Shown here: positions 491-53,987 of the stretch, piece by piece
How the letters are laid out: the number at the start of each line of letters is the position of its first letter
Position numbering within the stretch: position 1 is the stretch's first letter
Sequence record: ON190025.1
Strand: one strand, 5' to 3'
Length of the DNA stretch: 64,000 bases
Program-made: the position numbers and the translations under genes
Notes under the pieces: generated by a model
What the model was told of the DNA's origin: nothing
Database searches by the model: none
Seen by the model: only the letters and a program-made list of their open reading frames with translations

Positions 491-1138
491 ATGAAGAAAT
501 TTGGTGAATTTTTAACTGAAGTACAAAAGTACAGTTCCGCAGCAACGTCGATACGTGGTAAAGAAGTAGCAGCACTGGTTAAACTATACAAGAAAGGTAT
601 GTTTACACCGGGTGGTACTGCTCTTGACTATGGTGCTGGTAAATACGGTCGTAACGCTGAATTTTTACGCTCTGAAGGCATCAAAACGTATGCATATGAC
701 AAATTCAATGGTACATCTGCTGATGGTTGGACTGATGTCAGTCTGACTATCCCAAATGGGGAATCATTCGATACGGCGTTTACTTCTTACGTACTGAACG
801 TTGTACCTGAAGAAGTCGAAGCAGAGATTATTCGTGATGTTGAGTCTCGTGCTCGTGGTAAAGTTTTCCATATCACTCGCGGTACTGACATTACTCAAAC
901 TGTGTTGAACGTGATCAGTGGTAAAAGCAAAAACGATATCATGATGCAATTCATTGCTCAAGAATATCCAGATCTGTCTATGCAGATTGAAGCAGGTAAT
1001 GCAACAAGAGACGTGGCTAAAGAAATTGCTACTCGCGGTGTAGTTACAGCGAAAGACAGCTTTCAACGTATTCCAGACCTTTCAAAGTACGGTTACAAGA
1101 AATCTGGTTCAGGTGCTTCGGTAGTTTGGACAAAATAA
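491..1138 (+). CDS. class I SAM-dependent methyltransferase with capsid-targeting-like N-terminus
   Basis: Start at 491 after AGGTG; MKKFGEFLTE; motif I LDYGAGKYG, YAYDKF, FDTAFTSYVLNVV. Confidence 0.75.
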   Translation: MKKFGEFLTEVQKYSSAATSIRGKEVAALVKLYKKGMFTPGGTALDYGAGKYGRNAEFLRSEGIKTYAYDKFNGTSADGWTDVSLTIPNGESFDTAFTSYVLNVVPEEVEAEIIRDVESRARGKVFHITRGTDITQTVLNVISGKSKNDIMMQFIAQEYPDLSMQIEAGNATRDVAKEIATRGVVTAKDSFQRIPDLSKYGYKKSGSGASVVWTK

Positions 1139-1155
1139 TTTGAAATTATTTGAAT

Positions 1156-1191
1156 AAAAGGGTTGCTTCGGCAACCCTTTTTGCGTATTAT
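1156..1191 (+). promoter_or_regulatory. combined intrinsic terminator and early sigma70-type promoter
   Basis: AAAAGGGTTGC-TTCG-GCAACCCTTTT hairpin; TTGCTT (1163) -17 nt- TATTAT (1186). Confidence 0.8.
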
Positions 1192-1232
1192 AGCTCTATC
1201 GAAACGAGATACGAAAACAAAGAGAGTACATT

Positions 1233-1499
1233 ATGATGATTACTGAATCAATTCGCCTTACTACTGTACGTGATATGCTAGACTGCCCTGCTACGTCTTT
1301 CGCATTCTGGTCGCGAGAATTCATGATTATGCCTGACGAAGATTTAACAATCAAGACAGACGAAGAAAAAGTGACATTTATTCTTCTTGACTCTATGTGT
1401 GTTGTTACTGTAACATTAGACGATACATTAGAAACATTAGAAGCGGAATTCTCAGATGCACTTACAGAACGAGCAAAACGAGCAAAACGAATAGTTTAA
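1233..1499 (+). CDS. hypothetical early protein
   Basis: ORF with GAGAG SD behind the early promoter. Confidence 0.7.
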   Translation: MMITESIRLTTVRDMLDCPATSFAFWSREFMIMPDEDLTIKTDEEKVTFILLDSMCVVTVTLDDTLETLEAEFSDALTERAKRAKRIV

Positions 1500-1546
1500 C
1501 TGCTCGTATTTGTTAGATATAATACTCAAACATTGAAGGAAACATT

Positions 1547-2008
1547 ATGATTTATATTGAAACGAGCAACATTCTATCTGATGACACTCTTGGGTTTGCA
1601 ATTGCAGGTGCGCCTCAAATCGACCAGCTTGAGAAAAAAGAGCGTGACAACGTACTCAATAAAGCAATTGAAGTCAAGCTTTATGAGCGTCTACCGTCAA
1701 CTGCTGTCCTTGATTTTCTCTTAAATCAAAAGATTTCATTCATTGCCGTTTTGAGCAAAGTTTCGGTTATTGCTGAACAACAACGCGCTTGGTTTGATAC
1801 GCTCGGTAAGCAATTAAACGTTGATGTAATGTACACTGACTTTCAAGAAGTCGAGCATACTCGCGATACACTATTGATTGCTGAAGATCGTCATGAACTG
1901 AAGCTTCACGCTCAGAAAGATGGTAAGATTCTTCCATTTTCAACACATACACAATTTCAATTCATCATCGACCATTTAAAGATTCAGGTCGATACTAAGG
2001 AGCAGTAA
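1547..2008 (+). CDS. hypothetical protein, degenerate HAD-like
   Basis: YIETSNIL and LLIAEDR sit where HAD motifs I and IV would be, but the Asp residues are missing. Confidence 0.55.
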   Translation: MIYIETSNILSDDTLGFAIAGAPQIDQLEKKERDNVLNKAIEVKLYERLPSTAVLDFLLNQKISFIAVLSKVSVIAEQQRAWFDTLGKQLNVDVMYTDFQEVEHTRDTLLIAEDRHELKLHAQKDGKILPFSTHTQFQFIIDHLKIQVDTKEQ

Positions 2009-2358
2009 TGCAAGAAAAGCCAGATTTACTTAAAGACGACGAAATTGTTGATGTAGTCGATGATCAAGAGGTACAAGAATATCTCGAACAGATTAACGCT
2101 CAACGCCGTGCTTTGATTGAGAAAGAAGCTAAACGACGCATCAAAAAGAACTCGCGTGAGATTAAACGTCTGCGTAAGCACGCTGAAAAGTGTTTAATTG
2201 AAGAGAACAAAGCGGGTTATATCTACGCAATTCGTAAGCTGCGTTCTATTACTGGTCAAACTGTCGGTGACGATGTGCTTGAGACGCTTTGGGAAACAAG
2301 TCGCGAACAAGTATTGACTATCGTACGCTCTTTCGCAGAAGCGAAAGCGGGTCAGTAA
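2008..2358 (+). CDS. a-gt.4: T4 a-gt.4-like conserved protein
   Basis: KKNSREIKRLRKHAE...YIYAIRKLR...LWETSREQV pattern; position upstream of gene 47. Confidence 0.65.
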   Translation: MQEKPDLLKDDEIVDVVDDQEVQEYLEQINAQRRALIEKEAKRRIKKNSREIKRLRKHAEKCLIEENKAGYIYAIRKLRSITGQTVGDDVLETLWETSREQVLTIVRSFAEAKAGQ

Positions 2359-7530: not shown

Positions 7531-7564
7531 TTGAATAAAATATCATAATCTTGAAGGTAAAAGA

Positions 7565-9253: not shown

Positions 9254-9748
9254 TTGATGGACATCTTTGAATTCCTAGCGAAAGGCGAAGAAACTGAAGC
9301 GAGAATCGCTGAAGAAGAAAAAGAATACGAAGAAGAGCTGAAGAAAGCGAAGAAAGCAGAGAAATATTCACCGTTTGATTTCGTTGACAGTATCTACATG
9401 AAGAAACGTTTACCAGATGCGGTTGTTGATGAGCAATATCTACCATTTATGGTGAATCGCGCATTGAGCAACGGCATCGATACAGTTCTTCATGCGTATA
9501 TCATGGATTCGGTTGGTAGTAAGTTACCGAATGAAATGCAATATGATTATTTGTATCATGCAGTTCGTAAAGGTAAGCGATTCAATTCATGGGCAAAAGA
9601 ACCGAAATATGACTATGTTGATCTAATTGTTGAGGTATACAACGTCAATAAATCACATGCAATTAGTATTTCAAATCGTCTAACGCCCGAAGAGTTGAAT
9701 CAATTACAAGAATGGTACGACTCACGAACGGGGGGCTTAACACGCTAA
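9254..9748 (+). CDS. 62: clamp loader small subunit gp62
   Basis: YLPFMVNRALS, QYDYLYHAVRKGKRF; synteny. Confidence 0.9.
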   Translation: MMDIFEFLAKGEETEARIAEEEKEYEEELKKAKKAEKYSPFDFVDSIYMKKRLPDAVVDEQYLPFMVNRALSNGIDTVLHAYIMDSVGSKLPNEMQYDYLYHAVRKGKRFNSWAKEPKYDYVDLIVEVYNVNKSHAISISNRLTPEELNQLQEWYDSRTGGLTR

Positions 9749-10329
9749 ACAGAATCGGGTTTATGTTTGCAGTTGTCATTGTGCCAACGTTTGATAGTTG
9801 CGGCATTCTTTGAAGATTTGCCGCAATGAATACAAACTGAAATTGGTCTCTCATCCCAACTGTCGCTAATCTTTTTCTTTACATCGCGTGTTCTCTCAAC
9901 TCCTTTGAATGTAGACGGTACACCCTTTCGATTACTAGGCTTCCCGACTTTAGCATCACTGAGCTTTTGTTTATGTTCATTGCTCTTGGGCTTGCCTTTA
10001 AGAGAGTCTGAAATATTTCGGCGAGTTGTTTCGGAACGTTTAGTTCCCTTTACACTACCGCCTTCGCCGCCTATTTTGAGATTATAGGTGTTTTTACTAC
10101 TTACAAAATTTTCGTTCACTATCAGAGATTCGTATTCATATGCGTCTTCTTCGCAGTCGAACGTTTTTAAAATTATCTTTGTGAAATTATCAACACCGTA
10201 TTTATCAATTGAGCGAAATATAATCTTTCCAGAACCCATGTAACCGTCGTCGATGTTATTCGTTGAGTGTTTACCAATATAAACTTTATTGTTTATGTTG
10301 TTTATTATTTTATATACGATATGAAACAT
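9745..10329 (-). mobile_element. free-standing Seg-like GIY-YIG homing endonuclease with NUMOD3-type repeats
   Basis: IVYKIINNINNKVYIGKH, GYMGSG, YNLKIGGEGG, RSETTRRNIS/KSNEHKQKLS repeats; antisense insertion between 62 and regA. Confidence 0.85.
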
Positions 10330-10395: not shown

Positions 10396-10779
10396 ATGGC
10401 AGATTACATTAACAAACTTGAAATTCAATTACCAGATGACGATGCTTTTCTAAAAATTCGCGAGACTTTAACGCGAATTGGCATCGCCAATAACAAAACA
10501 AATACTCTATATCAATCGTGCCATATTCTTCAGAAACGTGGCGTGTATTTTCTAGTTCACTTTAAAGAGCTTCTAGCACTTGACGGTCGATGTGTAGAAA
10601 TTACTGACGAAGATATTGAACGTCGTAATAACATTGCCAAGTTACTTGAAGACTGGAATCTATGTAAAATCGCGCACCCTGAGTCGCACGAATTTACTGG
10701 CGATAATAAGTTTCGCGTGATCTCGTTCCGCGATTCTAAAAACTGGAATCTACGATACAAGTATAAGATAGGTGCATAA
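10396..10779 (+). CDS. regA: translational repressor RegA
   Basis: DAFLKIRETLTRIGIAN, LYQSCHILQKRG, FKELLALDG, RRNNIAKLL. Confidence 0.95.
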   Translation: MADYINKLEIQLPDDDAFLKIRETLTRIGIANNKTNTLYQSCHILQKRGVYFLVHFKELLALDGRCVEITDEDIERRNNIAKLLEDWNLCKIAHPESHEFTGDNKFRVISFRDSKNWNLRYKYKIGA

Positions 10780-11216
10780 TGAAAACTTACACTGAATTTT
10801 TGAGCGAATATCACATGCAACACCGAGCGCCGTCACCTCCTGATGACAGCCCTCTGTACGATATCTCATTGACGGGAACATTCCCTGAAGATGTATACGA
10901 AGCGAACGGTCTACGATGGTACGGCAATCACAATGATCGCGATGAGCGCGAGGCGTATCAAATCATCAAACGCTGTCACGGAAACCCGAATGCGAAAGTT
11001 AAAATCTATCGCGCATGTCCCGAGCACGTCAGCGTAATCAACTCAGGCGATTGGGTTACGATTGTCGAGAATTATGCAAAATCGCATCAAGAGTCTCGCG
11101 ACTATTCAAGTGAAATTTCAAACGACGATGAGCGTTATCATGTGATCAGTCAAGTTGTACTTGCTAAACAACTCTTCACTGAGGGATATTTCCTTGAGTG
11201 GGGATACGTTAAGTAG
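10779..11216 (+). CDS. capsid-targeted protein with ADP-ribosyltransferase-like domain
   Basis: MKTYTEFLSE; KVKIYRA...INSGDWVT...YAKSH...LEWGY pattern. Confidence 0.6.
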   Translation: MKTYTEFLSEYHMQHRAPSPPDDSPLYDISLTGTFPEDVYEANGLRWYGNHNDRDEREAYQIIKRCHGNPNAKVKIYRACPEHVSVINSGDWVTIVENYAKSHQESRDYSSEISNDDERYHVISQVVLAKQLFTEGYFLEWGYVK

Positions 11217-11233
11217 GTATTCAACTTGCTAAT

Positions 11234-11263
11234 AAAATTAAGAGGTGCAAGCCTCTTAATTTT
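11234..11263. terminator. 12-bp hairpin, probable terminator
   Basis: AAAATTAAGAGG-TGCAAG-CCTCTTAATTTT. Confidence 0.65.
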
Positions 11264-11275
11264 GAGGAATACAAT

Positions 11276-16892: not shown

Positions 16893-16928
16893 AAAAGGGT
16901 TGCTTCGGCAACCCTTTTTGCGTATTAT
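16893..16928 (+). promoter_or_regulatory. combined terminator and early promoter (near copy of 1156)
   Basis: Same hairpin; TTGCTT (16900) -17- TATTAT (16923). Confidence 0.8.
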
Positions 16929-16969
16929 AGCTACATCGAAACGACATCGACTAACAAAGAGAGTAAATT

Positions 16970-20488: not shown

Positions 20489-20517
20489 AAATCCCGTCGG
20501 TTAAGACGGGATTTTTT
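20489..20517 (+). terminator. intrinsic terminator
   Basis: AAATCCCGTC-GGTTAA-GACGGGATTT followed by T-run. Confidence 0.75.
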
Positions 20518-20525
20518 GTTTTGTC

Positions 20526-20531
20526 TAAATA
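20526..20531 (+). promoter_or_regulatory. late promoter
   Basis: CTAAATAG, about 30 nt upstream of the 20560 start. Confidence 0.7.
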
Positions 20532-20559: not shown

Positions 20560-22011
20560 ATGAAACAATTTAACGAATTTTATCAAGAAGTTCGCCTTGA
20601 TGAGATTTCTGATCGTGCGAATATCGACATTGATTGGGATTGGGGTCATGAGAACGGGACGGGCGAGACTTCAGCGCGATTCGACGCTGCTGGTGAGCGA
20701 TTTGAAGTTGGTGTTGAAGAAAGCAACCCTGGTTATTTCACTATTACATTCCAAAACTCAGGTGGTTATGCTCAGACAGGTAAAGCAGGACACTCTGCGG
20801 CTGCGGTATTCTCTGGTGTATTGACGACTCTACGTGAATTCACCGAGACGTATGAAGAAGAAATGGGCATGAAGCCGTATGAATATGACTTCAGCGCAGC
20901 TTATGAACTACCAAAGAATCACGAGTACTACGCACTTGTTAACAATCGACGCGAAGCGACTCGTTTAGATGAAGAAAGCAAGAAAAAGCTATTGAAAGAC
21001 TTGATTTCTCGTCCAATGCTTTACTACGCACTGTCACTGACTTTCGGTAAAGAATATGGTTATTCGACTGACATTAGCGACCGCTGGCTTGCACGTCTAG
21101 CAGGTGGCGCAAACGATTTCCGTTCTGTTCGTAAGAACGTGACGCGCAGTATTCTTTCAATGAGCGACAGCGACGTTAACCAAGCGTTGATGAGTATGAG
21201 TGGTTCAGTTTCATTTACTCTTACCAACGAGAACGAGCGTTCTAGCAGCTACGACACTGCATTTGGTGGCGGCCCGTCTCTTGAAGATTTTGTTGATGAA
21301 GCAGATCAATATCAAATCGAAGCATGGATCAATGAAGGTCGTGAAGATGAAATCATTGAACACGCAGATTGGCAAACTCTAGTTCGTATTGCTAGTTGGG
21401 GTCTGATGCACGAAGAGCTGATTTTCCACGATGACGAAGACGTTCGTGCAGCGGTAGTTGAGTCAGATTACGAAATGGGCGATAAACTTGCTTCATCTGG
21501 CGATTGGCAACACCGTAAACAAGCTGCGGACATGGGTTTTGGTATTTGGGATCTTGTTCTTGACTCAGATGAAGATGTACGGGACACAGCGTGGGATTGG
21601 TCATTCTCAAACGACGATGCAGACACACGTATCACATATGCGAAACGCTACGAAAGTGAATTCGGTCGCGATATGGCAGAAGATATCTGGGATAGAATGA
21701 TCGATGATACAGATGATTACGAAGAACGCCAATACGTAGCCGAACAAGGTTATCGAGTTGAGGAACTTCTAGCAGACCATGATGAAGACGTGCGCGAATC
21801 TGCAATTGGTGCGGTATTTAACGTACTGGGGTTAGATGGTCGCGAAGCTGCTGAGTTCTTGATGAATAACTCAGATCCATATCAAGAAGAGGTGTTTGAA
21901 TACGCTATAAATGGTAACTTCGGTCCGTCATTTGATGAAGCACTTATTGAGCTTGCTGAAGAAAACGGCGTTGATGTATCTGAGTACAAAGACGACGAAG
22001 ACGAAGAATAA
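20560..22011 (+). CDS. capsid-targeted acidic protein with C-terminal HEAT/LRV-like repeats
   Basis: MKQFNEFYQEVRLDE; repeats LIFHDDEDVR, LVLDSDEDVR, LLADHDEDVR. Confidence 0.75.
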   Translation: MKQFNEFYQEVRLDEISDRANIDIDWDWGHENGTGETSARFDAAGERFEVGVEESNPGYFTITFQNSGGYAQTGKAGHSAAAVFSGVLTTLREFTETYEEEMGMKPYEYDFSAAYELPKNHEYYALVNNRREATRLDEESKKKLLKDLISRPMLYYALSLTFGKEYGYSTDISDRWLARLAGGANDFRSVRKNVTRSILSMSDSDVNQALMSMSGSVSFTLTNENERSSSYDTAFGGGPSLEDFVDEADQYQIEAWINEGREDEIIEHADWQTLVRIASWGLMHEELIFHDDEDVRAAVVESDYEMGDKLASSGDWQHRKQAADMGFGIWDLVLDSDEDVRDTAWDWSFSNDDADTRITYAKRYESEFGRDMAEDIWDRMIDDTDDYEERQYVAEQGYRVEELLADHDEDVRESAIGAVFNVLGLDGREAAEFLMNNSDPYQEEVFEYAINGNFGPSFDEALIELAEENGVDVSEYKDDEDEE

Positions 22012-22015: not shown

Positions 22016-22055
22016 AAAAAAAGGGTTGACAGATGTCAGCCCTTTTTTGTATTAT
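22016..22055 (+). promoter_or_regulatory. combined terminator and early promoter
   Basis: GGGTTGAC-AGAT-GTCAGCCC followed by T-run; TTGACA -18- TATTAT. Confidence 0.75.
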
Positions 22056-27612: not shown

Positions 27613-27939
27613 ATGGCGCTTTTTGAGGTTATTATGAGACGACAAATCAATAGAATGAAAAACGATAATGGTGATTTCGAGCGTTATATGCGCACGCAAG
27701 CAGCTAGATACGCTCGAAGAGAGATCATCAACAATATAGCCGATGACAATGACATCTTCTTAGTCGGTTCTTACACGATGTACAAAGATTGTGATGAAAA
27801 GGTTGTTCTTCAGCTTGTACGATACGCAGGTTACGAGCGTGCTGAAGTTAAAGCAGTGCCGATTGTCGGTAGTCTTGTTGATTGTGTTAATGTCATTCAC
27901 GGTGTTGGGTTTAGAGTGGTGCTAAATAATGATAGTTAA
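27613..27939 (+). CDS. hypothetical protein
   Basis: ORF track; start may be the second ATG after GAGG. Confidence 0.6.
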   Translation: MALFEVIMRRQINRMKNDNGDFERYMRTQAARYARREIINNIADDNDIFLVGSYTMYKDCDEKVVLQLVRYAGYERAEVKAVPIVGSLVDCVNVIHGVGFRVVLNNDS

Positions 27940-28216: not shown

Positions 28217-28510
28217 ATGAGAGAAGCAATTGCATTATTGAAAAACACGAAGATGAGTTATACGGACATTAGCGCATTCGGCGACCCCGTAGTATATGTT
28301 CATGCCGGTCATGAAACGATTTTAAAGGTAGAATACACTAAAGATTGCTACTCATTTTTCGATTACAGAAGCAAGTATCTCTATACTGAACAATCAATCG
28401 ACGACTTAGAAATACATTTAAAATCAATAGATGTCGGTCTTGACGACGACCTACCATTAAATGGTAATATCGACAAAGACACGATACCAGACGGAGAGTT
28501 CCTTGAATGA
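28217..28510 (+). CDS. hypothetical protein
   Basis: ORF track. Confidence 0.6.
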   Translation: MREAIALLKNTKMSYTDISAFGDPVVYVHAGHETILKVEYTKDCYSFFDYRSKYLYTEQSIDDLEIHLKSIDVGLDDDLPLNGNIDKDTIPDGEFLE

Positions 28511-29427
28511 AATTTAGCGAATATCAAAGACTCAACGAGTCGTTAGATCGCCCTGCGAAATATAAACTCGTCCGAGAGTTACCAAATTTAAACGTGTATG
28601 CGTTTCAAGTTGATGGTGTTTATTATGAAATAGACATTCAGAAAGGTATTATACGTGAACCGAACGGGATGAAGTCTATGAAGGCTGAGGTGTCGTTCAA
28701 AGCTCTTGATGGTAGTGGTTATAATCTAACTAAGAAAGATGATAAAACAGCTCGTATCGTATTATCAACGGTTGTCGATGCTATTTTCAGTTTTGTTAGA
28801 GACAATTCACCAGCTCAAATAACATATAGCGCGTTCAATGACGCTGATCAGCGTGATGCCGATAAACGTCTCAGACTGTATAAGATCATGACAAAGGCGA
28901 AACTAAGAGAGTTCCCTGAGTATGATTTCAGAAACGTAGGTCGTGAATTCATTGTATATGACGTTGGTTATCAACAACGTGTAGATGAATTTTCGCGTCG
29001 AGCACGTCGTCCAGTCGGATTTGAAGAACATGGCGACCATGTTGAGGTTAATTTATCTCATGCCAATGCATATGCATTTGTAAGAGCGTTTGAAGTTGAA
29101 GATGGTTCGATGATTAGTGGTGTTCTAGGGCAAGGTCGTGCAGTTGTAAAAGCGGCTGACGAAATTGCAGCTAGGTTACGTGTAAATCGCGTTGTGTATG
29201 AAATGTCGGACAGGGAAGGTTGGTTAGCAGCACTACAGCACCCAATTTTCGACTATGGTGAAGGTCCTGAAGAAGATAGAACATATCTGGTTGGTGCATT
29301 CAAGAACTTCTATATCGTCTTGACTAGTCAAACAAGTCTAAAAATATACACCGACGATGCAGCGTTTACCAAATACGTGAATGCATTCGATGCGCCGTGG
29401 TTAAACCCAGAAATAATGGAATCTTAA
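28507..29427 (+). CDS. capsid-targeted protein, paralogue 1
   Basis: MKFSEYQRLNE; shared VLSTV...ITYSAF...RLRLYK domain. Confidence 0.7.
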   Translation: MKFSEYQRLNESLDRPAKYKLVRELPNLNVYAFQVDGVYYEIDIQKGIIREPNGMKSMKAEVSFKALDGSGYNLTKKDDKTARIVLSTVVDAIFSFVRDNSPAQITYSAFNDADQRDADKRLRLYKIMTKAKLREFPEYDFRNVGREFIVYDVGYQQRVDEFSRRARRPVGFEEHGDHVEVNLSHANAYAFVRAFEVEDGSMISGVLGQGRAVVKAADEIAARLRVNRVVYEMSDREGWLAALQHPIFDYGEGPEEDRTYLVGAFKNFYIVLTSQTSLKIYTDDAAFTKYVNAFDAPWLNPEIMES

Positions 29428-29428: not shown

Positions 29429-30304
29429 ATGAAATTTAGCGAATATCAAAACGAGCTAACAGAAGCGTTTAACCGCGCTGCACCCATAACAGCACGGCGT
29501 GGTAATCAGAGTTACTTCGAAATAGACGGCGCAGAGTATATGATTGGTCTGTATTATGAAGAAGATCGCAAAGCTCTAGGCGTGGATTTTATGCATAAGC
29601 CAGCGGGTGCAATGTCTTACAATTACAGCCTAGCAAAGGGTGATTCTAAAGACGCGATGACTGTTTTCGCCACGGTTATTTCTGAAATTAAGCACGTGAT
29701 GCAAAACAACATCGTAAATCGAATCACATTCGCAGCATTTAATGACACAAATCGTTCTGATTCCCGTAAGCGTACTCGATTATACAAAAGAATGGCTGAA
29801 CGATTTGCCAAAGATTTAGGTTTCAAATTGAGAGTATCAAATGAATCTGAAGGTGCGTCATTCGTGATGGAACGAATCGTTCCTATTGAAGACCCAAAGC
29901 CTGTTTACACTGATAACCCGACTGGTTATGATACAGAAATGGGAACTGAATTGCTCGATTTACCTACAATCAACGACGCTGCTATTGTTAAAGTAACGGG
30001 TGGTGATGGTATTTGGTATCTTCGTGGCGGTCACTCGTTAAACATCGAAGCTGGTATTGTTGAACTTTCGGCAGGTAGCATCAATGATGATGTTGCTTGG
30101 TATAAATCATTTTACCCGTTAGAGTGGTATTATGAACCTGAAGACGAGCTTTTCTACGATGATGAGCAACGTATAGCAATGATTTCTGGTAAGATCTGGG
30201 TAATCAATGGAAATGAGATCACCGTTTGGAGTGATGTTAGTTCTCTTGAAGCCCAAAGTGATTCGAAATTGAGTCAAGCAACGTTAGAACGAATTGGTGC
30301 TTAA
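29429..30304 (+). CDS. capsid-targeted protein, paralogue 2
   Basis: MKFSEYQNELTE; VFATV...ITFAAF...RTRLYK; first 22 nt identical to 28507. Confidence 0.7.
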   Translation: MKFSEYQNELTEAFNRAAPITARRGNQSYFEIDGAEYMIGLYYEEDRKALGVDFMHKPAGAMSYNYSLAKGDSKDAMTVFATVISEIKHVMQNNIVNRITFAAFNDTNRSDSRKRTRLYKRMAERFAKDLGFKLRVSNESEGASFVMERIVPIEDPKPVYTDNPTGYDTEMGTELLDLPTINDAAIVKVTGGDGIWYLRGGHSLNIEAGIVELSAGSINDDVAWYKSFYPLEWYYEPEDELFYDDEQRIAMISGKIWVINGNEITVWSDVSSLEAQSDSKLSQATLERIGA

Positions 30305-30315
30305 ATTAAATACAG

Positions 30316-30340
30316 AAAGGTAGCTTCGGCTACCTTTTTT
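30316..30340 (+). terminator. intrinsic terminator (UUCG loop)
   Basis: AAAGGTAGC-TTCG-GCTACCTTT followed by T-run. Confidence 0.85.
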
Positions 30341-30362: not shown

Positions 30363-30391
30363 TTGCATGAATTTCACGAAACGCCTATTAT
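30363..30391 (+). promoter_or_regulatory. early promoter
   Basis: TTGCAT -17- TATTAT, then AGCTACATCGAAACGACATCGACTA identical to the 16893 cassette. Confidence 0.75.
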
Positions 30392-34876: not shown

Positions 34877-34877
34877 T

Positions 34878-34915
34878 AAAATGGGTTGACAATTGTCAAC
34901 CCATTTTTGTATAAT
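34878..34915 (+). promoter_or_regulatory. 30-bp perfect palindrome acting as terminator and early promoter
   Basis: AAAATGGGTTGACAA|TTGTCAACCCATTTT; TTGACA (34886) -18- TATAAT (34910). Confidence 0.75.
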
Positions 34916-34946
34916 GCATATTGGTTACATTTAAGAGAAAAATATA

Positions 34947-36605: not shown

Positions 36606-37090
36606 CATACAGCGATACGAATCGTTATTCAGATGATGTTAGCTTAGAGCGTCGAAAGAAGACAGGTGAAGTATTCACCCCTCTGAATTTCGTTGATTTC
36701 ATGATCGATCAAAAAAAGCATTTACTGGAAGCTGGTAAGACATGGTTCGAGCCAAGCTTTGGTGACGGTAATATAGTTTGTCGTATAATCGAACGCAAAA
36801 TTGATATCGGCGTCGAACCATTACAAGCAGTTCGAGATGTATACGGTTGTGAATATATGAAAGACAATTATGAGTGTACTCTTCAGAGAATACGTGATAT
36901 AGTAGGCGAGTCCGATGAACTCGAAGAGATAATGTCTAATAATCTAGCATTTTGCAACACGTTAGACAAAAACGACCGAAGCGAGGGTCGTGAATGGCCT
37001 TCTTGGTTGTTGCAGCTAGACAGAAAATGTTTAAGAGAATCAGGCGGACTTGCGAGTTTTTTCGATTCAAATAATGAAGGTAAAAATTAA
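36602..37090 (+). CDS. SAM-binding half of a gamma-class N6-adenine methyltransferase
   Basis: Motif X GEVFTP, motif I FEPSFGDGN, motif II YGCEY, motif III CNTL; no NPPY. Confidence 0.7.
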   Translation: MTYSDTNRYSDDVSLERRKKTGEVFTPLNFVDFMIDQKKHLLEAGKTWFEPSFGDGNIVCRIIERKIDIGVEPLQAVRDVYGCEYMKDNYECTLQRIRDIVGESDELEEIMSNNLAFCNTLDKNDRSEGREWPSWLLQLDRKCLRESGGLASFFDSNNEGKN

Positions 37091-38001
37091 TGACATCTAA
37101 TTATGATGAAGTATCAGCTATTGCGGCTGAGCATTTAGGTAAAAAAGCTGGCGATTACAGCGATTTCGTTAATATCGTAGACGTTCGACCAGATTTACTT
37201 GTACCAATCCCGCGTGAGCTAAATCGAACTGATTACGGTATCACAAACGAAGACTTTGCAGGGTTTGATACATGGCATGGCTTCGAAGTATCGGCACTGA
37301 CTGAACAAGGTCTGCCTGTATCTGGTATGGCGAAAGTCGTATACCCGAGCGATTCACCGAATATCGTTGAAAGTAAATCAATGAAACTGTATTGGAACAG
37401 TTTCAACATGGCAAAAGTCGCTGCGACTCGTGCTGAAGTACAAGGTGCAATTGAAGCTATCGCGTCGCGTGATCTATCTGAAGTCATCGGTGCTGAAGTA
37501 CAAGTGAGCTTCTTCACAGTCAGATCAACACAACCGCACGGTATGACAGGGTATGCAGAACTCGACAAATACGTATCTGAAGACACTGTATTCGACTCAG
37601 AAAGCGGTGCAGATGCTGATTTACTGCAAGAATCTCACGTGAAGCGCATGAAAGTGTTCACGCCGAATCTACGTTCTAACTGTCGCGTGACGCATCAACC
37701 AGATTTCGGTGATCTGTATGTATACATGAAAGGTGAAAAAACACCAACTATTGACAGTCTCATGCAATACATCGTGTCATTCCGTAAAGAGAATCATTTC
37801 CATGAAGAATGTGTTGAAATGATTTACAAAGCGTTACTTGATAAGTTCGACCCACAAGAGCTTATGGTAACAGCGTTATACACACGTCGCGGCGGTTGGA
37901 ATATCTGCCCAGCACGTGCAACGCATGAAGAACTACTACCAGAAGCACTTGGTAGTGAAGTTGTCTCGCACACTAACGGAAGTTGTTTATTCCGTCAGTA
38001 A
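37090..38001 (+). CDS. queF: preQ0 reductase, bimodular E. coli-type QueF
   Basis: VESKSMKLYWNSFN, RSNCRVTHQPD, ENHFHEECVE, YTRRGG. Confidence 0.9.
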   Translation: MTSNYDEVSAIAAEHLGKKAGDYSDFVNIVDVRPDLLVPIPRELNRTDYGITNEDFAGFDTWHGFEVSALTEQGLPVSGMAKVVYPSDSPNIVESKSMKLYWNSFNMAKVAATRAEVQGAIEAIASRDLSEVIGAEVQVSFFTVRSTQPHGMTGYAELDKYVSEDTVFDSESGADADLLQESHVKRMKVFTPNLRSNCRVTHQPDFGDLYVYMKGEKTPTIDSLMQYIVSFRKENHFHEECVEMIYKALLDKFDPQELMVTALYTRRGGWNICPARATHEELLPEALGSEVVSHTNGSCLFRQ

Positions 38002-38056
38002 TAAGAGCTATGATGAGTGTTCAATTGTGAGCACTCATATACTTGAGAGGTTAAAA

Positions 38057-38773
38057 ATGAAAGTAGTATCTGTTCTAAGCGGTGGCTTGGACTCAACAAT
38101 CCTTACGTACAAACTAGTAGATGAATACGGCAAAGACAATGTGTTTGCATTATCGTTCTACTACGGTCAAAAACAGTCAATTGAGCTAGAAAAAGCTAAA
38201 TTGACTTGTCAAAAGCTCGGTATCGAGCATCGTCTAATCGACATCTCATTCTTAGGTGAAGTGGTAGCACCTGTATGTGCAAATATCGCTGGTTCAGATG
38301 TTGCTATGCCAACTATTCAAGACGTTCTAGGCGACCCTCAACCGCCAACTGAAGTTCCATATCGTAATATGCTATTGAACACAATCGCGTTCTCATTCGC
38401 GCAAGCAAATGGCTGTGCAGCGGTTTTTACTGGCATTCAAGTGCATGACGCATACGGTTACTGGGACTGCACACAAGACTTTCTTGACGGCATGAACAAT
38501 CTATCTGCACTGAATCGTCAACACGAGATTGCATTACTTGCTCCGTTCGCTCGTATGTCAAAGGCAGATGAAATCGCTATTGGTGTTAAGCTCGGTGTAC
38601 CGTTTGAAGATAGTCTAACGTGTTACGACCCTAACGAAGCAGGTGAAAGCTGTGGTAAATGTCCGTCATGTGCTGAACGCATCATGAACTTCGGTAAAGC
38701 GGGTATTAAAGACCCAGCACCTTACTCGATTGATATCCCATGGGAACAAGTATTTGCTAAGGCAGGTCATTAA
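38057..38773 (+). CDS. queC: 7-cyano-7-deazaguanine synthase
   Basis: LSGGLDST, YGQK, VPYRN, YWDC, TCY, CGKCPSCAER. Confidence 0.95.
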   Translation: MKVVSVLSGGLDSTILTYKLVDEYGKDNVFALSFYYGQKQSIELEKAKLTCQKLGIEHRLIDISFLGEVVAPVCANIAGSDVAMPTIQDVLGDPQPPTEVPYRNMLLNTIAFSFAQANGCAAVFTGIQVHDAYGYWDCTQDFLDGMNNLSALNRQHEIALLAPFARMSKADEIAIGVKLGVPFEDSLTCYDPNEAGESCGKCPSCAERIMNFGKAGIKDPAPYSIDIPWEQVFAKAGH

Positions 38774-39381
38774 TGTGTGGACTATTTGCTGCTAGAAGCA
38801 AGCAAGAGCTTATTGAATTGTCAAAGAGTAATATTCATCGTGGTTCGCGTACTCACTCTGTGAGTACGTTTAAGAACGGTCATGTGACGGTTCACAAGTT
38901 TACAGGGGCGTTCAATACAACTAATGTGCCTGATAGTGCAGATTTTTATATCTGTCATGTACAAGCACCAACGGGAACAAGTGCTCAAGCACATCCCGCT
39001 ATTGTAACAATTGAAGAGAACGGTCAGTTGCATGATTCACACGTGTGGCATAATGGTATTCTCAAAGACCATTACATGAAAAATCAGACTCAAGAATGGG
39101 ACACTGCACACATTGCTGAAGCGATTTGCTACGGCAAATTAAACGAACTTGACGGTACGTTTGCTTGTTTTCACTTCATTAACGGCAATTTGCGTGTATT
39201 TCGCAATGAAATTAGCCCGTTGTTCATGAGCGAAGACGGTACATCGTTTAGCAGCACGCGAACGATTTTAACTCCAGAGCATGTTGAGCCAAATAAAGTG
39301 TTTAACATCGACTTGAAGACGTTTAAGATGACAGTCGTAAACGAGTTCAAGACTCTTGAAAATCCCTATTTCTTTATGTGA
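38773..39381 (+). CDS. class II (Ntn) glutamine amidotransferase domain
   Basis: N-terminal MCGLF, HRG, H..APT, AHP, WHNGIL, DTAHI; coupled to queC. Confidence 0.8.
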   Translation: MCGLFAARSKQELIELSKSNIHRGSRTHSVSTFKNGHVTVHKFTGAFNTTNVPDSADFYICHVQAPTGTSAQAHPAIVTIEENGQLHDSHVWHNGILKDHYMKNQTQEWDTAHIAEAICYGKLNELDGTFACFHFINGNLRVFRNEISPLFMSEDGTSFSSTRTILTPEHVEPNKVFNIDLKTFKMTVVNEFKTLENPYFFM

Positions 39382-49242: not shown

Positions 49243-49246
49243 TTTT

Positions 49247-49285: not shown

Positions 49286-49320
49286 ACAACTACTGAAACG
49301 AAACAACGAAAGAGAACATT

Positions 49321-49578: not shown

Positions 49579-49590
49579 GAGGAAAACATT

Positions 49591-51093: not shown

Positions 51094-51121
51094 AAAAAGG
51101 GAGCAATTAGCTCCCTTTTTT
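51092..51121. terminator. bidirectional terminator (reverse complement of the 40898 element)
   Basis: A7 GGGAGC-AATTA-GCTCCC T6. Confidence 0.85.
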
Positions 51122-51122
51122 G

Positions 51123-51680
51123 TTATTTTGACTTCTTAGCGGCTTTTTTAGCACGTTTAGTAGCCTTTTCAATCTTTATCAGCTCTGCTTCCATCTTCTC
51201 AAGACCTTGAAGATATTGATCAGATTGCTTGATGTCGCTACGAAATACGCCTTTCGCTGTTGCAATATCAATGTCACTGTTGAGACTTGTGCGAAGCTTA
51301 CGAACTAAGAACAACGAACGCTCTAAGTCTTTTTCAAATGCTGCTACTTTCTTCTCAGTGATATCGTCTTGTTTCAGTGAGCGATACTTCTCGATTTTCT
51401 TCATAGTCTTTTTGAGTTCGCTGTAGTCTTTGCGTGCTTGACCGCCTGCAAATAACGCACCACCAATAAGACCATGAATACCGAGACTAATTGCACCCCA
51501 TGTTGCAAGTGGTACAGCGACTGCCAAACCACCTGTTGCTGTCGCACCCGCTGCTGCGGTCATAAAGCCAAATGCAGCACCGAGAGATGCACCAGCTAAT
51601 GCAGAACGACCAGCCCATTGCTTTATTGTAGCTTCTTTAAGCTCTGTTTCTTTATATTCATCAAATGTTTTAAGTTCCAT
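51123..51680 (-). CDS. capsid-targeted glycine-zipper/coiled-coil protein
   Basis: MELKTFDEYKETELKEA; GxxxG-rich hydrophobic hairpin; late promoter on - at 51808-51813. Confidence 0.7.
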   Translation of the reverse strand: MELKTFDEYKETELKEATIKQWAGRSALAGASLGAAFGFMTAAAGATATGGLAVAVPLATWGAISLGIHGLIGGALFAGGQARKDYSELKKTMKKIEKYRSLKQDDITEKKVAAFEKDLERSLFLVRKLRTSLNSDIDIATAKGVFRSDIKQSDQYLQGLEKMEAELIKIEKATKRAKKAAKKSK

Positions 51681-51712
51681 CACGGTATTCCTTTGTTGTC
51701 AGTAATAAAAAA

Positions 51713-51813
51713 CGAGGGAAGCGACTATAGTTGGAACCAATACTCGCAGTGACCAATGCGATACATAGTCACGACCCTCGAAACTGAATAAAATATTGTG
51801 TATGATATATTTA
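51713..51813 (-). promoter_or_regulatory. late promoter plus multi-stem leader followed by a U-tract
   Basis: CTAAATA on -; stems CGAGGG/CCCTCG, GACTAT/ATAGTC, TCGCA/TGCGA. Confidence 0.6.
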
Positions 51814-51948
51814 GTGCTACAACACTACTTGATTTACAATTTTCTCATAAAAAAGACAAAATAATTGTTGACTAAAGTGTAAAAAATGCTTATCATAAGG
51901 CATATTCTGATTAAACGTTCAATAATCCAACAAAAAGAGATTTATATT

Positions 51949-52413
51949 ATGACACCAAAAGACATTCTACGCGCTGCGAACACTACTGTTTCTAAGCTGA
52001 GTATTTTAAATGGCGAGTACAGCACAGTTGTTCTAGGCTCACCTGCAAGTGGTAAAAACACTATGCTATTGGGTATGATGATGCAACGTGGCATCGACAA
52101 CTGTACAATGATCGTTACAGAAACACATCCCGCTAATATGGCTAATAAAATTGGTGTTGGTGCATTGGTTGTATGTGGTGGACTGAATCTTGAAAAACTC
52201 ATTGAGGCAGTTTCATTTGCATGTACTCAAGATCGTGAACATATCTTCATCGAGCACGTGCAGCCTATGTTAGGTCACGACATCGTTGAAATTCTAGAGT
52301 CAATCGTGAAACCATTCAACAAGCGCATCTACATCGGTATTCAAGCTGCACGCAGTAGCGGTCTAGGTGATAACTATAAAACACAAATGATGAATACATT
52401 GACACTGGGGTAA
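51949..52413 (+). CDS. degenerate P-loop protein
   Basis: VVLGSPASGKNT, HIFIEH at the Walker B position. Confidence 0.55.
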   Translation: MTPKDILRAANTTVSKLSILNGEYSTVVLGSPASGKNTMLLGMMMQRGIDNCTMIVTETHPANMANKIGVGALVVCGGLNLEKLIEAVSFACTQDREHIFIEHVQPMLGHDIVEILESIVKPFNKRIYIGIQAARSSGLGDNYKTQMMNTLTLG

Positions 52414-52415
52414 TT

Positions 52416-52691
52416 ATGAACTTCTTTCAAATAAGCATGAATTTAGCTATTGACCCATCAATTGAACCAGACGAAGAGTGGGCTGATAAGCAATTGATCA
52501 TTGCTTCTAGTCACGAAATGGCTAGAAAACTTGCTGATGCACGCAAGAAAGGTCGTCATGGTTGGTTCGACCCTAATGTGTGCTCTATCGACTATCTCTA
52601 TGAGTTGCGCGATAAAGCACTTGAAGATAATGATCACGTGAGTGTAATGAACTACACCGCAATGATCGCTATGCGGGAGAGTGTACAATGA
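52416..52691 (+). CDS. hypothetical protein
   Basis: KLADARKKGRHGW motif. Confidence 0.65.
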   Translation: MNFFQISMNLAIDPSIEPDEEWADKQLIIASSHEMARKLADARKKGRHGWFDPNVCSIDYLYELRDKALEDNDHVSVMNYTAMIAMRESVQ

Positions 52692-53701
52692 ATGTACTAT
52701 TCACGAGTCTATTCGGCTCGAAACTCTATGGCACAGACACGCCAGAGTCAGATACAGACTACAAAGCTGTCTTTCAACCTGAAATACGTAAACTGTTGCG
52801 CGGTGTTGCAATAAAGAACTCAGTACACACGACTGGCAAATCGTTTGAGAAGAACGGTGCAGACGATGAAGACTTTGAATATATACCAGTTCAAGTGTTC
52901 ATGCGTGACTTTCTTGCAGGTCAGTCGTATGCAATTGAATTGGCATTTAATGCACTACAGAACCCAGATGACTGCAACCCTGCATTCTCTGCTATGTGTC
53001 GTGAGTTAACAAGTACGTATTTGACATCAAACGTTAAAGCAATGACTGGTTACGCGCTCAATCAAGCACAGAAGTACGGCATCAAAGGTACGCGACTAAA
53101 CAGCCTTATGCAATTCGCCCGTGCTGTAGAGACGCACAACGTCGATTCTAAAGCGAAGTTGGGTTCAAGCCCTGAGTTGTGCAAACAACTATGGGAACTG
53201 TGTGCAGAAGACGCTCACGTGCGTTTTCAGTGGTATCATGGGCCTAAAACTAAAGACGCGAGCGATTTGAAAGACCCTGCATTCAGTGTGCTTGAGAAAG
53301 TATTCGGTCTTGAGATAACGTTTGAAGAAGCTGCGGGTCGTCTTGAGAAGATGATGAGCAAATATGGTGCTCGTGCATATCAAGCGCGTGCTGCAAGTGG
53401 TTCAGATTGGAAAGCGATATCACATGCCATGCGTGTAATCGATCAAGCAATCGATATACTAACAGTAGGTAAGTTGGAATTCCCTTTGAAGAACGCAGCG
53501 TTCTATCGTGACGTGAAACAAGGTAAGTACAAGTGGGAATATGTGTCTGAAGTGCTGCAAGAACGTCTTGAAGTGCTAGAAGATGCAAAAGATACAACGT
53601 CACTTCCGAATCACACACCTGAATTGGTTAATGATTTCTACGAGTGGTATGATGACTGGCTTGACGAATTCTACTTCCCTTCAGTATATAGTTACAATTG
53701 A
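52688..53701 (+). CDS. Pol-beta-superfamily nucleotidyltransferase (T4 NrdC.11-like)
   Basis: LFGSKLYGTDTPESDTDYKAVF, DWKAISHAMR, LEFPL. Confidence 0.85.
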   Translation: MNVLFTSLFGSKLYGTDTPESDTDYKAVFQPEIRKLLRGVAIKNSVHTTGKSFEKNGADDEDFEYIPVQVFMRDFLAGQSYAIELAFNALQNPDDCNPAFSAMCRELTSTYLTSNVKAMTGYALNQAQKYGIKGTRLNSLMQFARAVETHNVDSKAKLGSSPELCKQLWELCAEDAHVRFQWYHGPKTKDASDLKDPAFSVLEKVFGLEITFEEAAGRLEKMMSKYGARAYQARAASGSDWKAISHAMRVIDQAIDILTVGKLEFPLKNAAFYRDVKQGKYKWEYVSEVLQERLEVLEDAKDTTSLPNHTPELVNDFYEWYDDWLDEFYFPSVYSYN

Positions 53702-53702
53702 T

Positions 53703-53710
53703 TATAAATA
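53703..53710 (+). promoter_or_regulatory. late promoter
   Basis: TATAAATA 26 nt upstream of the 53736 start. Confidence 0.8.
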
Positions 53711-53735
53711 CGTTAAACAAATAAAGAGGTTTAAC

Positions 53736-53987
53736 ATGAAAGGTTTTAACGATTTTTTCAAAAAAGGTGAAGTCAAGCTGCAAGAAACTGAACAAGAGTT
53801 TCACGAGCGCGTTGTCAAGCATCGTAAAGTAGATGACAAACGTTATCCAGACTTATCTAAGGCTGGGCTAGAGGGTCCATACACTGATCTTAATGGTAAA
53901 GTGTACTACTATGATGCACGCGAGGGTCTTTATTATGACCCAGACACTGACATTTACATCACTGCTAAAGAATTACGTTTACCGTAA
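53736..53987 (+). CDS. 83-aa late protein with capsid-targeting-like N-terminus and Tyr-rich beta motif
   Basis: GAGG SD; MKGFNDFFKKGEVKLQE; GKVYYYDAREGLYYDPDTDIY. Confidence 0.7.
   Translation: MKGFNDFFKKGEVKLQETEQEFHERVVKHRKVDDKRYPDLSKAGLEGPYTDLNGKVYYYDAREGLYYDPDTDIYITAKELRLP

What the first reader, a model, noticed from the sequence alone, without database searches (positions are those of the whole stretch)
491..53987. Dispersed family of capsid-targeted late genes with varied enzymatic payloads: a virion-delivered effector arsenal
Seen: seven otherwise unrelated or paralogous ORFs begin with an MKx(F/Y)xE(F/Y)...E leader: 491 MKKFGEFLTE, 10779 MKTYTEFLSE, 20560 MKQFNEFYQEVRLDE, 28507 MKFSEYQRLNE, 29429 MKFSEYQNELTE, 51680(-) MELKTFDEYKETELKE and 53736 MKGFNDFFKKGEVKLQE. 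Most lie downstream of a (TA)TAAATA late promoter (10357, 20526, 27923, 51808 on -, 53703), sit as islands among early genes and are often fenced by terminators. Established: T4 internal proteins IPII/IPIII carry the capsid-targeting sequence MKTYQEFIAE, are cleaved after Glu by gp21 and are injected with the DNA; IPI* is an anti-restriction protein. Inference: the phage uses this leader as a swappable address tag to package a methyltransferase, an ART-like domain, HEAT-like repeats, a glycine-zipper protein and other domains for delivery at time zero, probably against host defences.
Basis: partly seen in the sequence, partly recalled or inferred. Interest (0 to 1): 0.85.

Follow-up and report, generated by a model that had tools for sequence, protein, structure and literature searches.

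The report
Capsid-targeting leaders on vibriophage proteins
Seven otherwise unrelated genes of a KVP40-like Vibrio phage begin with the short leader that T4-type phages use to load proteins into the capsid and inject them with the DNA, so they are good candidates for injected proteins, which is a known kind of system that I could not find described for this phage group.

Summary
The window is identical to Vibrio phage PVA23 (KVP40-like) record positions 182963-246962. The core motif K-x(0,1)-[FY]-x-[DE]-[FY] follows the start Met in 7 of 107 annotated genes, where 0.09 are expected (P about 1e-11). All seven have an L-x-E 10-17 residues from the Met; 16 of the other 100 genes do. With the first 20 residues removed, only 28507 and 29429 are related.

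The leader is near-identical to that of annotated internal head proteins of a Tequatrovirus fetched by tool. Its conserved positions 4, 7, 8 and 10 are the ones mapped in T4 as targeting and processing residues. The phage encodes a T4-type prohead protease and scaffold. Leaders and promoter boxes are conserved in relatives at 42-66% identity.

The best reading is that these are T4-type capsid-targeted, gp21-processed internal proteins. Packaging, cleavage and injection are inferred, because no virion proteome was found. Payload claims:
- Methyltransferase: supported at family level.
- HEAT/ARM-like repeats and a glycine-zipper-like membrane segment: plausible.
- ART-like domain: not supported.
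- Anti-defence role: speculative.

Verdict: new members of a known kind, of moderate interest.

The parts
1..483 (+). 3' end of PVA23_272 (481 aa; its start lies 1,446 nt upstream of this end, outside the window). Possible further member of the set.
   Evidence: Its N-terminus has F-x-x-F-L-x-E at residues 5-11. This is kept in D482, but the Glu is Ala in phage 1.081.O. It sits between gp55 and the methyltransferase gene in three phages.
491..1138 (+). Leader gene 1, 215 aa. The leader is residues 1-10 (nt 491-520). The body is a small SAM-dependent methyltransferase-like protein.
   Evidence: The protein's only [LI]xE is in the leader. It has no promoter box of its own and lies behind gp24 (TATAAATA)-gp55-PVA23_272.
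1156..1191 (+). Terminator hairpin overlapping an early-promoter-like TTGCTT-N17-TATTAT (PeSL type), approximate bounds.
   Evidence: The consensus for nt-1/KVP40 is given in PMC4122927.
10357..10364 (+). TATAAATA late-promoter-like box in front of regA (10396-10779).
10779..11216 (+). Leader gene 2, 145 aa. The leader is residues 1-10. The body is a widespread domain of unknown function that also occurs inside giant multidomain (polyvalent-type) proteins.
   Evidence: A hairpin follows at about 11233-11264.
20489..20531 (+). Terminator hairpin followed by a cTAAATA late-promoter-like box, 28 nt before the start of 20560.
   Evidence: The box is kept in KVP40 and D482. Gene 19 of this phage has the same arrangement.
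20560..22011 (+). Leader gene 3, 483 aa, pI 4.2. The leader is residues 1-15. The body is acidic with HEAT/ARM-like repeats.
22017..22055 (+). Terminator hairpin overlapping an early-promoter-like element (PeSL type), approximate bounds.
27921..27928 (+). cTAAATA box 33 nt before 27962. It is the possible late promoter of the gene run 27962, 28217, 28507, 29429.
28507..29427 (+). Leader gene 4, 306 aa. The leader is residues 1-11. It is a paralogue of gene 5.
29429..30304 (+). Leader gene 5, 291 aa. The leader is residues 1-12. The body is a two-domain protein of unknown function.
   Evidence: A terminator follows at about 30314-30339, and an early-promoter-like element at about 30363-30391.
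51123..51680 (-). Leader gene 6, 185 aa. The leader is residues 1-16. It is followed by a Gly/Ala-rich hydrophobic segment (about residues 21-82) and a basic coiled C-terminus.
   Evidence: A terminator lies at 51094-51120.
51681..51813 (-). cacTAAATA box plus a conserved, structured 5' leader upstream of gene 6.
   Evidence: No Rfam match.
53703..53710 (+). TATAAATA box 25 nt before the start of 53736.
   Evidence: It is kept in D482 and nt-1.
53736..53987 (+). Leader gene 7, 83 aa. The leader is residues 1-17.
   Evidence: A terminator lies at 53990-54013.
62298..62468 (+). Doubtful weak variant, 56 aa (hydrophobic-P-E-Y ... V-N-E). I do not count it as a member.
   Evidence: It is phrog_15328, function unknown.

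Best explanation
The seven genes encode T4-type capsid-targeted internal head proteins. There are probably two to four more in the same genome: PVA23_141, PVA23_30, PVA23_137 and PVA23_272.

Proposed mechanism:
1. A 10-17-residue N-terminal propeptide is predicted to be helical. It has aromatic residues three apart (positions 4 and 7 in the canonical register) and ends in L-x-E.
2. The propeptide binds the gp22-based scaffolding core while the prohead assembles.
3. The gp21 prohead protease cuts after the Glu. The mature protein stays in the head and leaves with the DNA at infection.

Shown here:
- The motif is real and enriched.
- It is near-identical to annotated Tequatrovirus internal-protein leaders.
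- It is conserved on diverged orthologues.
- The bodies are unrelated to each other.
- The phage has a T4-type protease and scaffold.
- Late-promoter-like boxes and terminators lie around most of the genes.

Inferred:
- Packaging, cleavage and ejection.
- What the payloads do after entry. These are a small SAM-methyltransferase-like protein, a polyvalent-protein-type domain, an acidic HEAT/ARM-like protein, two paralogues of unknown function, a membrane-active protein and an 83-residue protein.
- An anti-defence role. This is only an analogy with T4 Ip1-3, and I give it about 0.4.
For: Enrichment and specificity.

Comparator fetched by tool: two annotated internal head proteins of Escherichia phage teqsoen carry a leader identical in 7 of 10 positions to that of 10779, with conservative changes at positions 8 and 9. 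One of the two is phrog_3155 'internal virion protein'.

PMC9026906: in T4 IPIII, residues 4 and 7 matter for targeting and residues 8 and 10 for processing. These are the conserved positions here.

Machinery: gp21 is Peptidase_S77 (E 2e-98), gp22 is T4_CASP (E 5e-71), and an Alt-like ART begins with an F...L-N-E N-terminus.

Leader conservation:
- In the 29429/28507 family, 9 of the first 12 columns are invariant although the paralogues are 24% identical overall.
- Leaders are kept at 32-48% identity in relatives of 10779 and 20560.
- The leader of 51680 is kept in nt-1 at 42% identity.

Promoter boxes:
- TAAATA occurs only 12 times on the + strand, and 7 of these lie 13-38 nt before gene starts.
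- The boxes are kept in KVP40, D482 and nt-1.
- Known late genes of this phage use TATAAATA or cTAAATA.

Portability:
- The 10779 domain is found in 3,780 proteins, 31 of the top 149 longer than 1,000 aa, and the match starts at profile position about 9.
- The methyltransferase family has [LI]xE in the first 14 residues in 69% of 112 members, against 14% of control windows.
- One relative lies in a T4-like structural module and another on a T4-like contig behind a TAAATA box.
- nt-1 has an extra leader gene between the same TATAAATA box and the orthologue of 53736.
Against: - There is no direct evidence of virion presence or processing for any KVP40-like phage.
- Only two of the seven genes have a late box within 60 nt, so the direct association is not significant.
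- 10779 probably also gets early or middle transcription through regA, and 491 has no late box of its own.
- The 20560 protein is very acidic (pI 4.2), unlike the basic DNA-binding internal proteins described in PMC9026906. It could be a core component that is degraded.
- Gene 6 has a long hydrophobic segment and a weak holin-like Pfam hit (E 0.03), so a lysis or membrane role is possible.
- PVA23_30 has the core motif but no [LI]xE anywhere.
- The orthologue of PVA23_272 in phage 1.081.O lacks the Glu.
- None of the bodies matches a known internal-protein family.
Confidence: 0.7

Rival explanations
1. The proteins enter the prohead through the leader but are assembly or core accessory proteins. 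Like gp22, gp67 and gp68, they would be cut up and expelled before DNA packaging, so they are not delivered to the next host.
For: - The 20560 protein is highly acidic and has 7 [LI]xE sites.
- The gp68 homologue also starts with an M-K-F-I-S-E type N-terminus, and the core proteins carry many such sites.
- PMC9026906 says core proteins are cleaved into fragments that leave the head.
Against: - The density of [LI]xE in the seven bodies is about 1 per 100 residues, against 5 per 100 in gp22.
- 491, 53736 and PVA23_141 have only the leader site.
- Enzyme-like and polyvalent-type payloads make more sense after delivery.
Confidence: 0.13
2. The N-terminal motif serves something other than capsid targeting. 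Candidates are a translation-initiation or mRNA-level signal shared by a regulon, or a generic amphipathic helix for membrane or partner binding. The likeness to T-even leaders would then be convergent.
For: - 20 of 107 genes start with M-K, so part of the motif is common.
- 10779 follows the translational repressor gene regA.
- Gene 6 is membrane-like.
Against: - Codons differ between leaders while the residues are kept, so selection acts on the protein.
- The motif is absent from the other 100 genes.
- It matches annotated internal-protein leaders residue by residue, including the L-x-E.
- This phage has the matching protease.
Confidence: 0.1
3. The shared N-terminus is chance or a remnant of common ancestry (paralogy) with no present function.
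For: 28507 and 29429 are true paralogues with 21 identical leader nucleotides.
Against: - Poisson P is about 1e-11.
- The other bodies are unrelated.
- The leader is the best-conserved block across orthologues.
Confidence: 0.02

Closest known systems
T-even internal proteins (T4 IPI, IPII, IPIII and the Ip families of related Tequatrovirus) with their capsid targeting sequence
   Same: - A 10-19-residue N-terminal propeptide with key residues at positions 4, 7, 8 and 10, and cleavage after Glu by gp21.
- Mature parts that are otherwise unrelated to each other.
- Non-essential, variable genes (PMC9026906; PMC3012670; PMC12373910).
- Leaders nearly identical to those found here.
   Different: - The known ones are small (about 8-20 kDa) and sit in two loci. 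Here the bodies range from 83 to 483 residues, some look like enzymes or repeat proteins, and the genes lie at six loci in the window and at least nine in the genome.
- In four of the seven, the spacing between the aromatic pair and L-x-E is stretched (11-17 residues).
- No body is homologous to a known Ip family.
- Nothing has been shown experimentally.
T4 Alt (packaged, injected ADP-ribosyltransferase)
   Same: - It is an enzyme packaged in the head, trimmed at the N-terminus by gp21 and injected (PMC9026906; PMC5512222).
- This phage has an Alt-like protein with an F...L-N-E N-terminus and an ART domain.
- The 29429 model resembles several proteins annotated as Alt in BFVD.
   Different: - None of the seven has a detectable ART domain.
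- I could not see which part of the Alt proteins the structure match covers.
Polyvalent proteins of phages and conjugative elements (Iyer et al. 2017, PMC5512222)
   Same: - Effector domains that travel with the DNA.
- The 10779 domain occurs inside 2,000-4,000-residue proteins together with NUDIX, GNAT, DUF7178 and DUF5661.
- Solo versions of such domains near structural genes are described there.
   Different: Here each domain is a separate small gene with its own cleavable address tag, rather than being strung into one polypeptide.
Phage P1 Dar proteins (DarB methyltransferase-helicase in the head)
   Same: A methyltransferase carried in the capsid to act at entry (PMC5512222).
   Different: - DarB is huge and fused to a helicase.
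- The 491 protein is a 215-residue stand-alone Methyltransf_23-like protein with an unknown substrate, and it would use a different packaging route.
Inner-body and ejection proteins of phiKZ-like giant phages
   Same: Many head proteins are cut after Glu by a gp21-related protease and ejected (PMC9026906).
   Different: The phage lineage and the propeptides differ. No T4-type 10-residue leader is involved.

Membership tests
T4-type CTS-bearing internal head proteins | N-terminal propeptide of about 10-19 residues with the targeting residues at positions 4 and 7 | tested here: met
   - F or Y at positions 4 and 7 in 491, 10779, 20560 and 53736.
- The same pair is shifted by one residue in 28507 and 29429, and by two in 51680.
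- Near-identical to annotated Tequatrovirus internal-protein leaders.
- The positions are as given in PMC9026906.
T4-type CTS-bearing internal head proteins | Prohead-protease site (L/I-x-E) closing the leader | tested here: met
   L-x-E ends at residue 10, 10, 15, 11, 12, 16 and 17 in the seven genes. This is 7/7 against 16/100 other genes.
T4-type CTS-bearing internal head proteins | The phage has the T4-type prohead protease and scaffolding core | tested here: met
   Peptidase_S77 at E 2e-98 and T4_CASP at E 5e-71. gp67/68-like genes are annotated.
T4-type CTS-bearing internal head proteins | Late expression, together with the head genes | tested here: inconclusive
   - Boxes lie directly before 20560 and 53736.
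- 10779, 28507 and 29429 have them only at operon level.
- 51680 has one 127 nt upstream, and 491 has none.
- The boxes are conserved in relatives.
- No expression data are available.
T4-type CTS-bearing internal head proteins | Present in the virion, N-terminally processed, and ejected with the DNA | not testable with these tools
   No virion proteome of a KVP40-like phage was found in the held library.
T4-type CTS-bearing internal head proteins | Leader shared by mature parts that are otherwise unrelated | tested here: met
   With the first 20 residues removed, only 28507/29429 match (E 1e-11). All other pairs have E > 0.05.
Class I SAM-dependent methyltransferase (gene 491) | Rossmann-type motif I (D/E-x-G-x-G) and a match to a methyltransferase profile | tested here: inconclusive
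   - The window's own protein scores PF13489 at E 0.014, below the cut-off.
- 43 of 56 aligned relatives match at E <= 0.001, and D46, G48, A49 and G50 are invariant.
- Profile against PDB: only E about 0.7 hits, all of them methyltransferases.
- The substrate is unknown.
   - No ART family in Pfam for any of the seven.
- The 10779 model (pLDDT 63) has no PDB fold match.
- The 29429 family against this phage's Alt-like protein gives hhalign probability 0.1%.
- The only hint is BFVD structure matches to proteins annotated as Alt, E about 1e-5.
HEAT/ARM repeat proteins (gene 20560) | Tandem helical repeats that match HEAT/ARM profiles | tested here: inconclusive
   - PF02985 at E 6e-4 and PF13646 at E 0.013, both below the cut-offs.
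- Three D-E-D-V-R-type repeats are visible.
- The 48%-identical orthologue in phage 1.081.O is annotated armadillo-like.
- No structure was predicted.
Polyvalent-protein-associated domains (gene 10779) | The same domain embedded in very large multidomain phage or mobile-element proteins alongside disparate enzymatic domains | tested here: met
   - 3,780 proteins carry the domain.
- 31 of the top 149 are longer than 1,000 aa.
- NUDIX, GNAT, DUF7178 and DUF5661 occur in the same polypeptides.
- PHROGs calls it 'ParB C-terminal domain'.

The most novel reading that the evidence does not exclude
The T4 capsid-targeting leader is an old, portable address tag used well beyond the T-even coliphages. 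Marine T4-like phages would use it to load real enzymes and polyvalent-type effector domains into the head. In particular, a widespread family of about 220-residue SAM-methyltransferases would be virion-packaged, protease-processed and injected, to act at the moment of DNA entry. 69% of its members carry an [LI]xE in the first 14 residues, and some of its genes lie inside structural modules.
Probability: 0.35. Interest if true: 0.65.

Novelty: new member of a known kind. Interest (0 to 1): 0.5.

Why it matters
If the leader works here as it does in T4, it gives a short, sequence-readable list of the proteins that a broad-host-range vibriophage group delivers with its DNA: 7 in this window and about 9-12 in the genome. 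None of them is annotated in any of roughly 48 related genome records. The list includes a methyltransferase family that is common in marine metagenomes. It also shows that internal-protein catalogues can be read from N-termini in distant Straboviridae. Finally, it links the single-gene, tagged format of T4-like phages with the fused, polyvalent format of other phages. The idea itself, diverse injected proteins sharing only a targeting leader, is established for T-even phages.

Tried and rejected
- **KVP40 genome paper and Repoila 1994:** neither is held, so I cannot exclude that the leaders were already noted there.
- **Literature searches** linking KVP40-like phages with CTS or internal proteins, or with virion proteomics, found nothing relevant. 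Two of them were badly framed and wasted.
- **Sequence search against PDB** for 491, 10779 and 20560 found nothing. A profile of the methyltransferase family against PDB gave only E about 0.7.
- **AlphaFold model of 10779** (6-sequence alignment, pLDDT 63): no fold match.
- **AlphaFold model of 29429** (pLDDT 84):
  - Against PDB there are only weak matches, to the DNase-I-like subdomain of RNase E and to GNAT folds, with TM about 0.25 by query. I assign no function from these.
  - BFVD gives matches to proteins annotated as Alt and to polyvalent-like proteins. hhalign against this phage's Alt-like protein found nothing.
- **NCBIfam:** nothing.
- **Rfam on the 5' leader of gene 6:** nothing.
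- **A looser N-terminal regex** picks up about 1% of all start codons, so its extra hits are not counted: PVA23_19, _56, _58, _243, _246, gp5 and window 62298.
- **Depletion of [LI]xE in the payloads** is not demonstrable. The density is about what composition predicts.

Full report
**What the window is.** The 64,000 bases are identical (0 mismatches) to positions 182963-246962 of Vibrio phage PVA23. PVA23 (ON190025.1) is a 247-kb KVP40-like member of Schizotequatrovirus, Straboviridae. The region is the replication, recombination and nucleotide-metabolism arm, with many small unnamed genes.

**The observation.** The seven N-termini read as the finding says.
- I reduced the motif to K-x(0,1)-[FY]-x-[DE]-[FY]. 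In all six frames of the window it occurs at 14 distinct places, and 7 of them come directly behind a start Met.
- In the 107 annotated proteins there are 7 N-terminal and 4 internal occurrences. From the internal rate, 0.09 N-terminal cases are expected, Poisson P about 1e-11.
- All seven also have L-x-E ending at residue 10-17, against 16 of the other 100 genes (P about 1e-5).
- With the first 20 residues cut off, only 28507 and 29429 are related (E 1e-11). Every other pair is unrelated.
- Codons differ between the leaders, apart from that paralogue pair, so the constraint is on the peptide.
- I scanned the rest of the PVA23 record piece by piece. That gave two more strict cases (PVA23_30 and PVA23_141) and looser ones: PVA23_137, and PVA23_272, whose last 483 bases open this window.

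**Is it the T4 capsid-targeting sequence?** I did not use remembered letters.
- I searched with this phage's endonuclease V and fetched the neighbourhood of denV in Escherichia phage teqsoen, a Tequatrovirus. Two genes annotated as internal head proteins lie there.
- Their first ten residues match the leader of 10779 in 7 of 10 positions, with I/L and T/S or A/S changes at positions 8 and 9. One of the two is phrog_3155, 'internal virion protein'.
- A review of T4 head assembly states that the first ten residues of IPIII suffice for packaging, that residues 4 and 7 matter for targeting and residues 8 and 10 for processing, and that gp21 cuts after Glu (PMC9026906). Positions 4, 7, 8 and 10 are the conserved F/Y, F/Y, L and E of the canonical leaders here.
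- PVA23 encodes a Peptidase_S77 prohead protease (E 2e-98) and a T4-type scaffold (E 5e-71).
- Its Alt-like ADP-ribosyltransferase begins with an F...L-N-E N-terminus.
- The protease, scaffold, gp68-like and major capsid proteins all have [LI]xE near their N-termini.

**Conservation.**
- In the 29429/28507 family, 9 of the first 12 alignment columns are invariant, against about 10% of the rest. The two paralogues are only 24% identical.
- The five metagenomic relatives of 10779 (32-88% identity) all start with a leader of the same pattern.
- Orthologues of 20560 in KVP40, D482 and 1.081.O (90, 64 and 48% identity) keep it.
- Orthologues of 51680 in D482 and nt-1 (66 and 42%) keep K-T-F-D-E-[YF] and L-x-E.
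- Orthologues of 53736 keep both the leader and the TATAAATA box.
- In nt-1 an additional leader-bearing gene sits between that box and the orthologue. This is cassette gain or loss of the kind known from T-even internal-protein loci (PMC4122927).

**Transcription signals.** Known late genes of PVA23 have TATAAATA or cTAAATA 20-60 nt upstream. TAAATA is rare on the + strand: 12 occurrences, against roughly 46 that I estimate from base composition. Seven of the 12 lie 13-38 nt before gene starts.
- Of the seven leader genes, 20560 and 53736 have their own box.
- 10779 follows regA, which has one.
- 28507 and 29429 follow 27962 and 28217, behind one.
- 51680 has one 127 nt upstream, in front of a conserved structured leader.
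- 491 has none, and sits behind gp24 (TATAAATA), gp55 and PVA23_272.
- The direct association is therefore weak (P 0.11). The boxes are, however, conserved in relatives.
- Intrinsic terminators directly follow six of the genes, 28507 being the exception. After 491, 20560 and 29429 an early-promoter-like -35/N17/-10 follows or overlaps the stem-loop. These are three of the four such elements in the window, and they fit the PeSL consensus published for nt-1/KVP40.

**The payloads.**
- **491** belongs to a family of more than 233 proteins of about 220 residues, mostly metagenomic.
  - 43 of 56 aligned members match Methyltransf_23, and the DxGxG motif is invariant. The window's own score is below threshold.
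  - 69% of 112 members have [LI]xE in the first 14 residues, against 14% of control windows. Many start with M-K, then hydrophobic-x-acidic-hydrophobic-hydrophobic-x-E.
  - One relative with the strict leader lies on a T4-like contig behind a TAAATA box. Another lies inside a gp13-gp15-sheath-terminase module. A third is on a contig that does not look T4-like.
- **10779** carries a domain found in 3,780 cluster representatives.
  - It is often internal in 2,000-4,000-residue proteins that also hold NUDIX, GNAT, DUF7178 or DUF5661. The profile match begins after the leader.
  - This is the architecture of the injected polyvalent proteins described by Iyer et al. (PMC5512222).
  - Some short stand-alone relatives have the leader and others do not.
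  - Its fold could not be assigned.
- **20560** is very acidic, has HEAT/ARM-like repeats and is confined to Vibrio KVP40-like phages.
- **28507 and 29429** gave a good model (pLDDT 84) but only weak or ambiguous fold matches.
- **51680** has a 60-residue Gly/Ala-rich hydrophobic stretch with 19 small-xxx-small motifs, then a basic coiled tail.
- **53736** is an 83-residue protein of unknown function.
- No ART domain was found in any of the seven.

**Mechanism and rivals.**
- The best-supported reading is that these are capsid-targeted, gp21-processed internal proteins. I give this 0.7.
- That they act against host defences rests only on analogy with T4 Ip1-3 (PMC12373910). I give it about 0.4.
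- The main rival is that some of them, especially the acidic 20560 protein, are core accessory proteins that are degraded and not delivered.
- A non-packaging role for the leader, or chance, is unlikely.
- Gene 6 is the least secure on functional grounds, because a late membrane protein could also belong to lysis.

**Novelty.**
- Diverse injected proteins that share only a capsid-targeting leader are textbook for T-even phages, and packaged enzymes are known (Alt, DarB).
- I found no held paper that reports such leaders in KVP40-like phages. [quoted passage not shown]
- The original KVP40 genome paper could not be read.
- I therefore file this as new members of a known kind. What is new is the candidate set of effectors and the leader-bearing methyltransferase family.

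Noticed in passing
window 51681-51813 (minus strand); L012 upstream of 621(-); L013 upstream of 1796(-): A structured 5' leader of about 100 nt, with nested inverted repeats, lies between a cacTAAATA box and gene 6. It is conserved in D482 and nt-1 although the protein is only 42-66% identical. It has no Rfam match.
   Followed up: partly
window about 1156-1191, 16893-16931, 22017-22055, 30363-30391: Four near-identical cassettes: a stem-loop, or in the last case a -35-like box, plus TATTATAGC-N3-ATCGAAACGA. They fit the PeSL early-promoter/terminator elements described for nt-1/KVP40. Three of the four directly follow leader genes.
   Followed up: partly
L013:3744-4097 (Vibrio phage nt-1): An extra 117-residue gene with a canonical leader is inserted between the TATAAATA box and the orthologue of window 53736. 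It has no PHROG match.
   Followed up: partly
L014:10755-10937 (metagenomic T4-like contig): The gene right after the leader-bearing methyltransferase homologue also starts with a K-S-F-S-E-F core at residues 4-9. This may be a second tagged gene in tandem.
   Followed up: no
window 32828-39381: A cluster of 7-deazaguanine (queuosine/archaeosine-type) pathway genes. It holds GTP cyclohydrolase I, a transglycosylase-like 458-residue protein (so annotated in phage 1.081.O), QueD-like and QueC-like genes, an amidotransferase-like gene and a small DNA methyltransferase at 36602-37090. This suggests modified DNA bases in this phage group.
   Followed up: no
window 9745-10329(-) and 54014-54730(-): Seg-like and HNH homing endonuclease genes on the minus strand. 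Each is preceded by TA-TAAATA boxes on its own strand: 10358 for the first, 54829 and 54851 for the second. The D482 genome has a different homing endonuclease at the regA site and lacks 10779.
   Followed up: no
window 25117(-), 7321, 16188, 57519: Four further genes have a TAAATA box 13-38 nt upstream but no leader. 16188 and 16597 are annotated as Rz-like spanins in D482, which would fit late expression.
   Followed up: no
L006 (PVA23 record 74532-78847, minus strand): Two small leader-type genes, PVA23_137 and PVA23_141, lie within the tRNA gene region. PVA23_141 starts 30 nt after a cTAAATA box that directly follows a tRNA gene.
   Followed up: partly
L016 (ENA contig k141_2654826): A methyltransferase-family member lies next to two more methyltransferase-like genes, on a contig with chitin-synthase-like, glycosyl hydrolase and hemerythrin genes. 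The contig is not obviously T4-like, so the family is not confined to Straboviridae.
   Followed up: no
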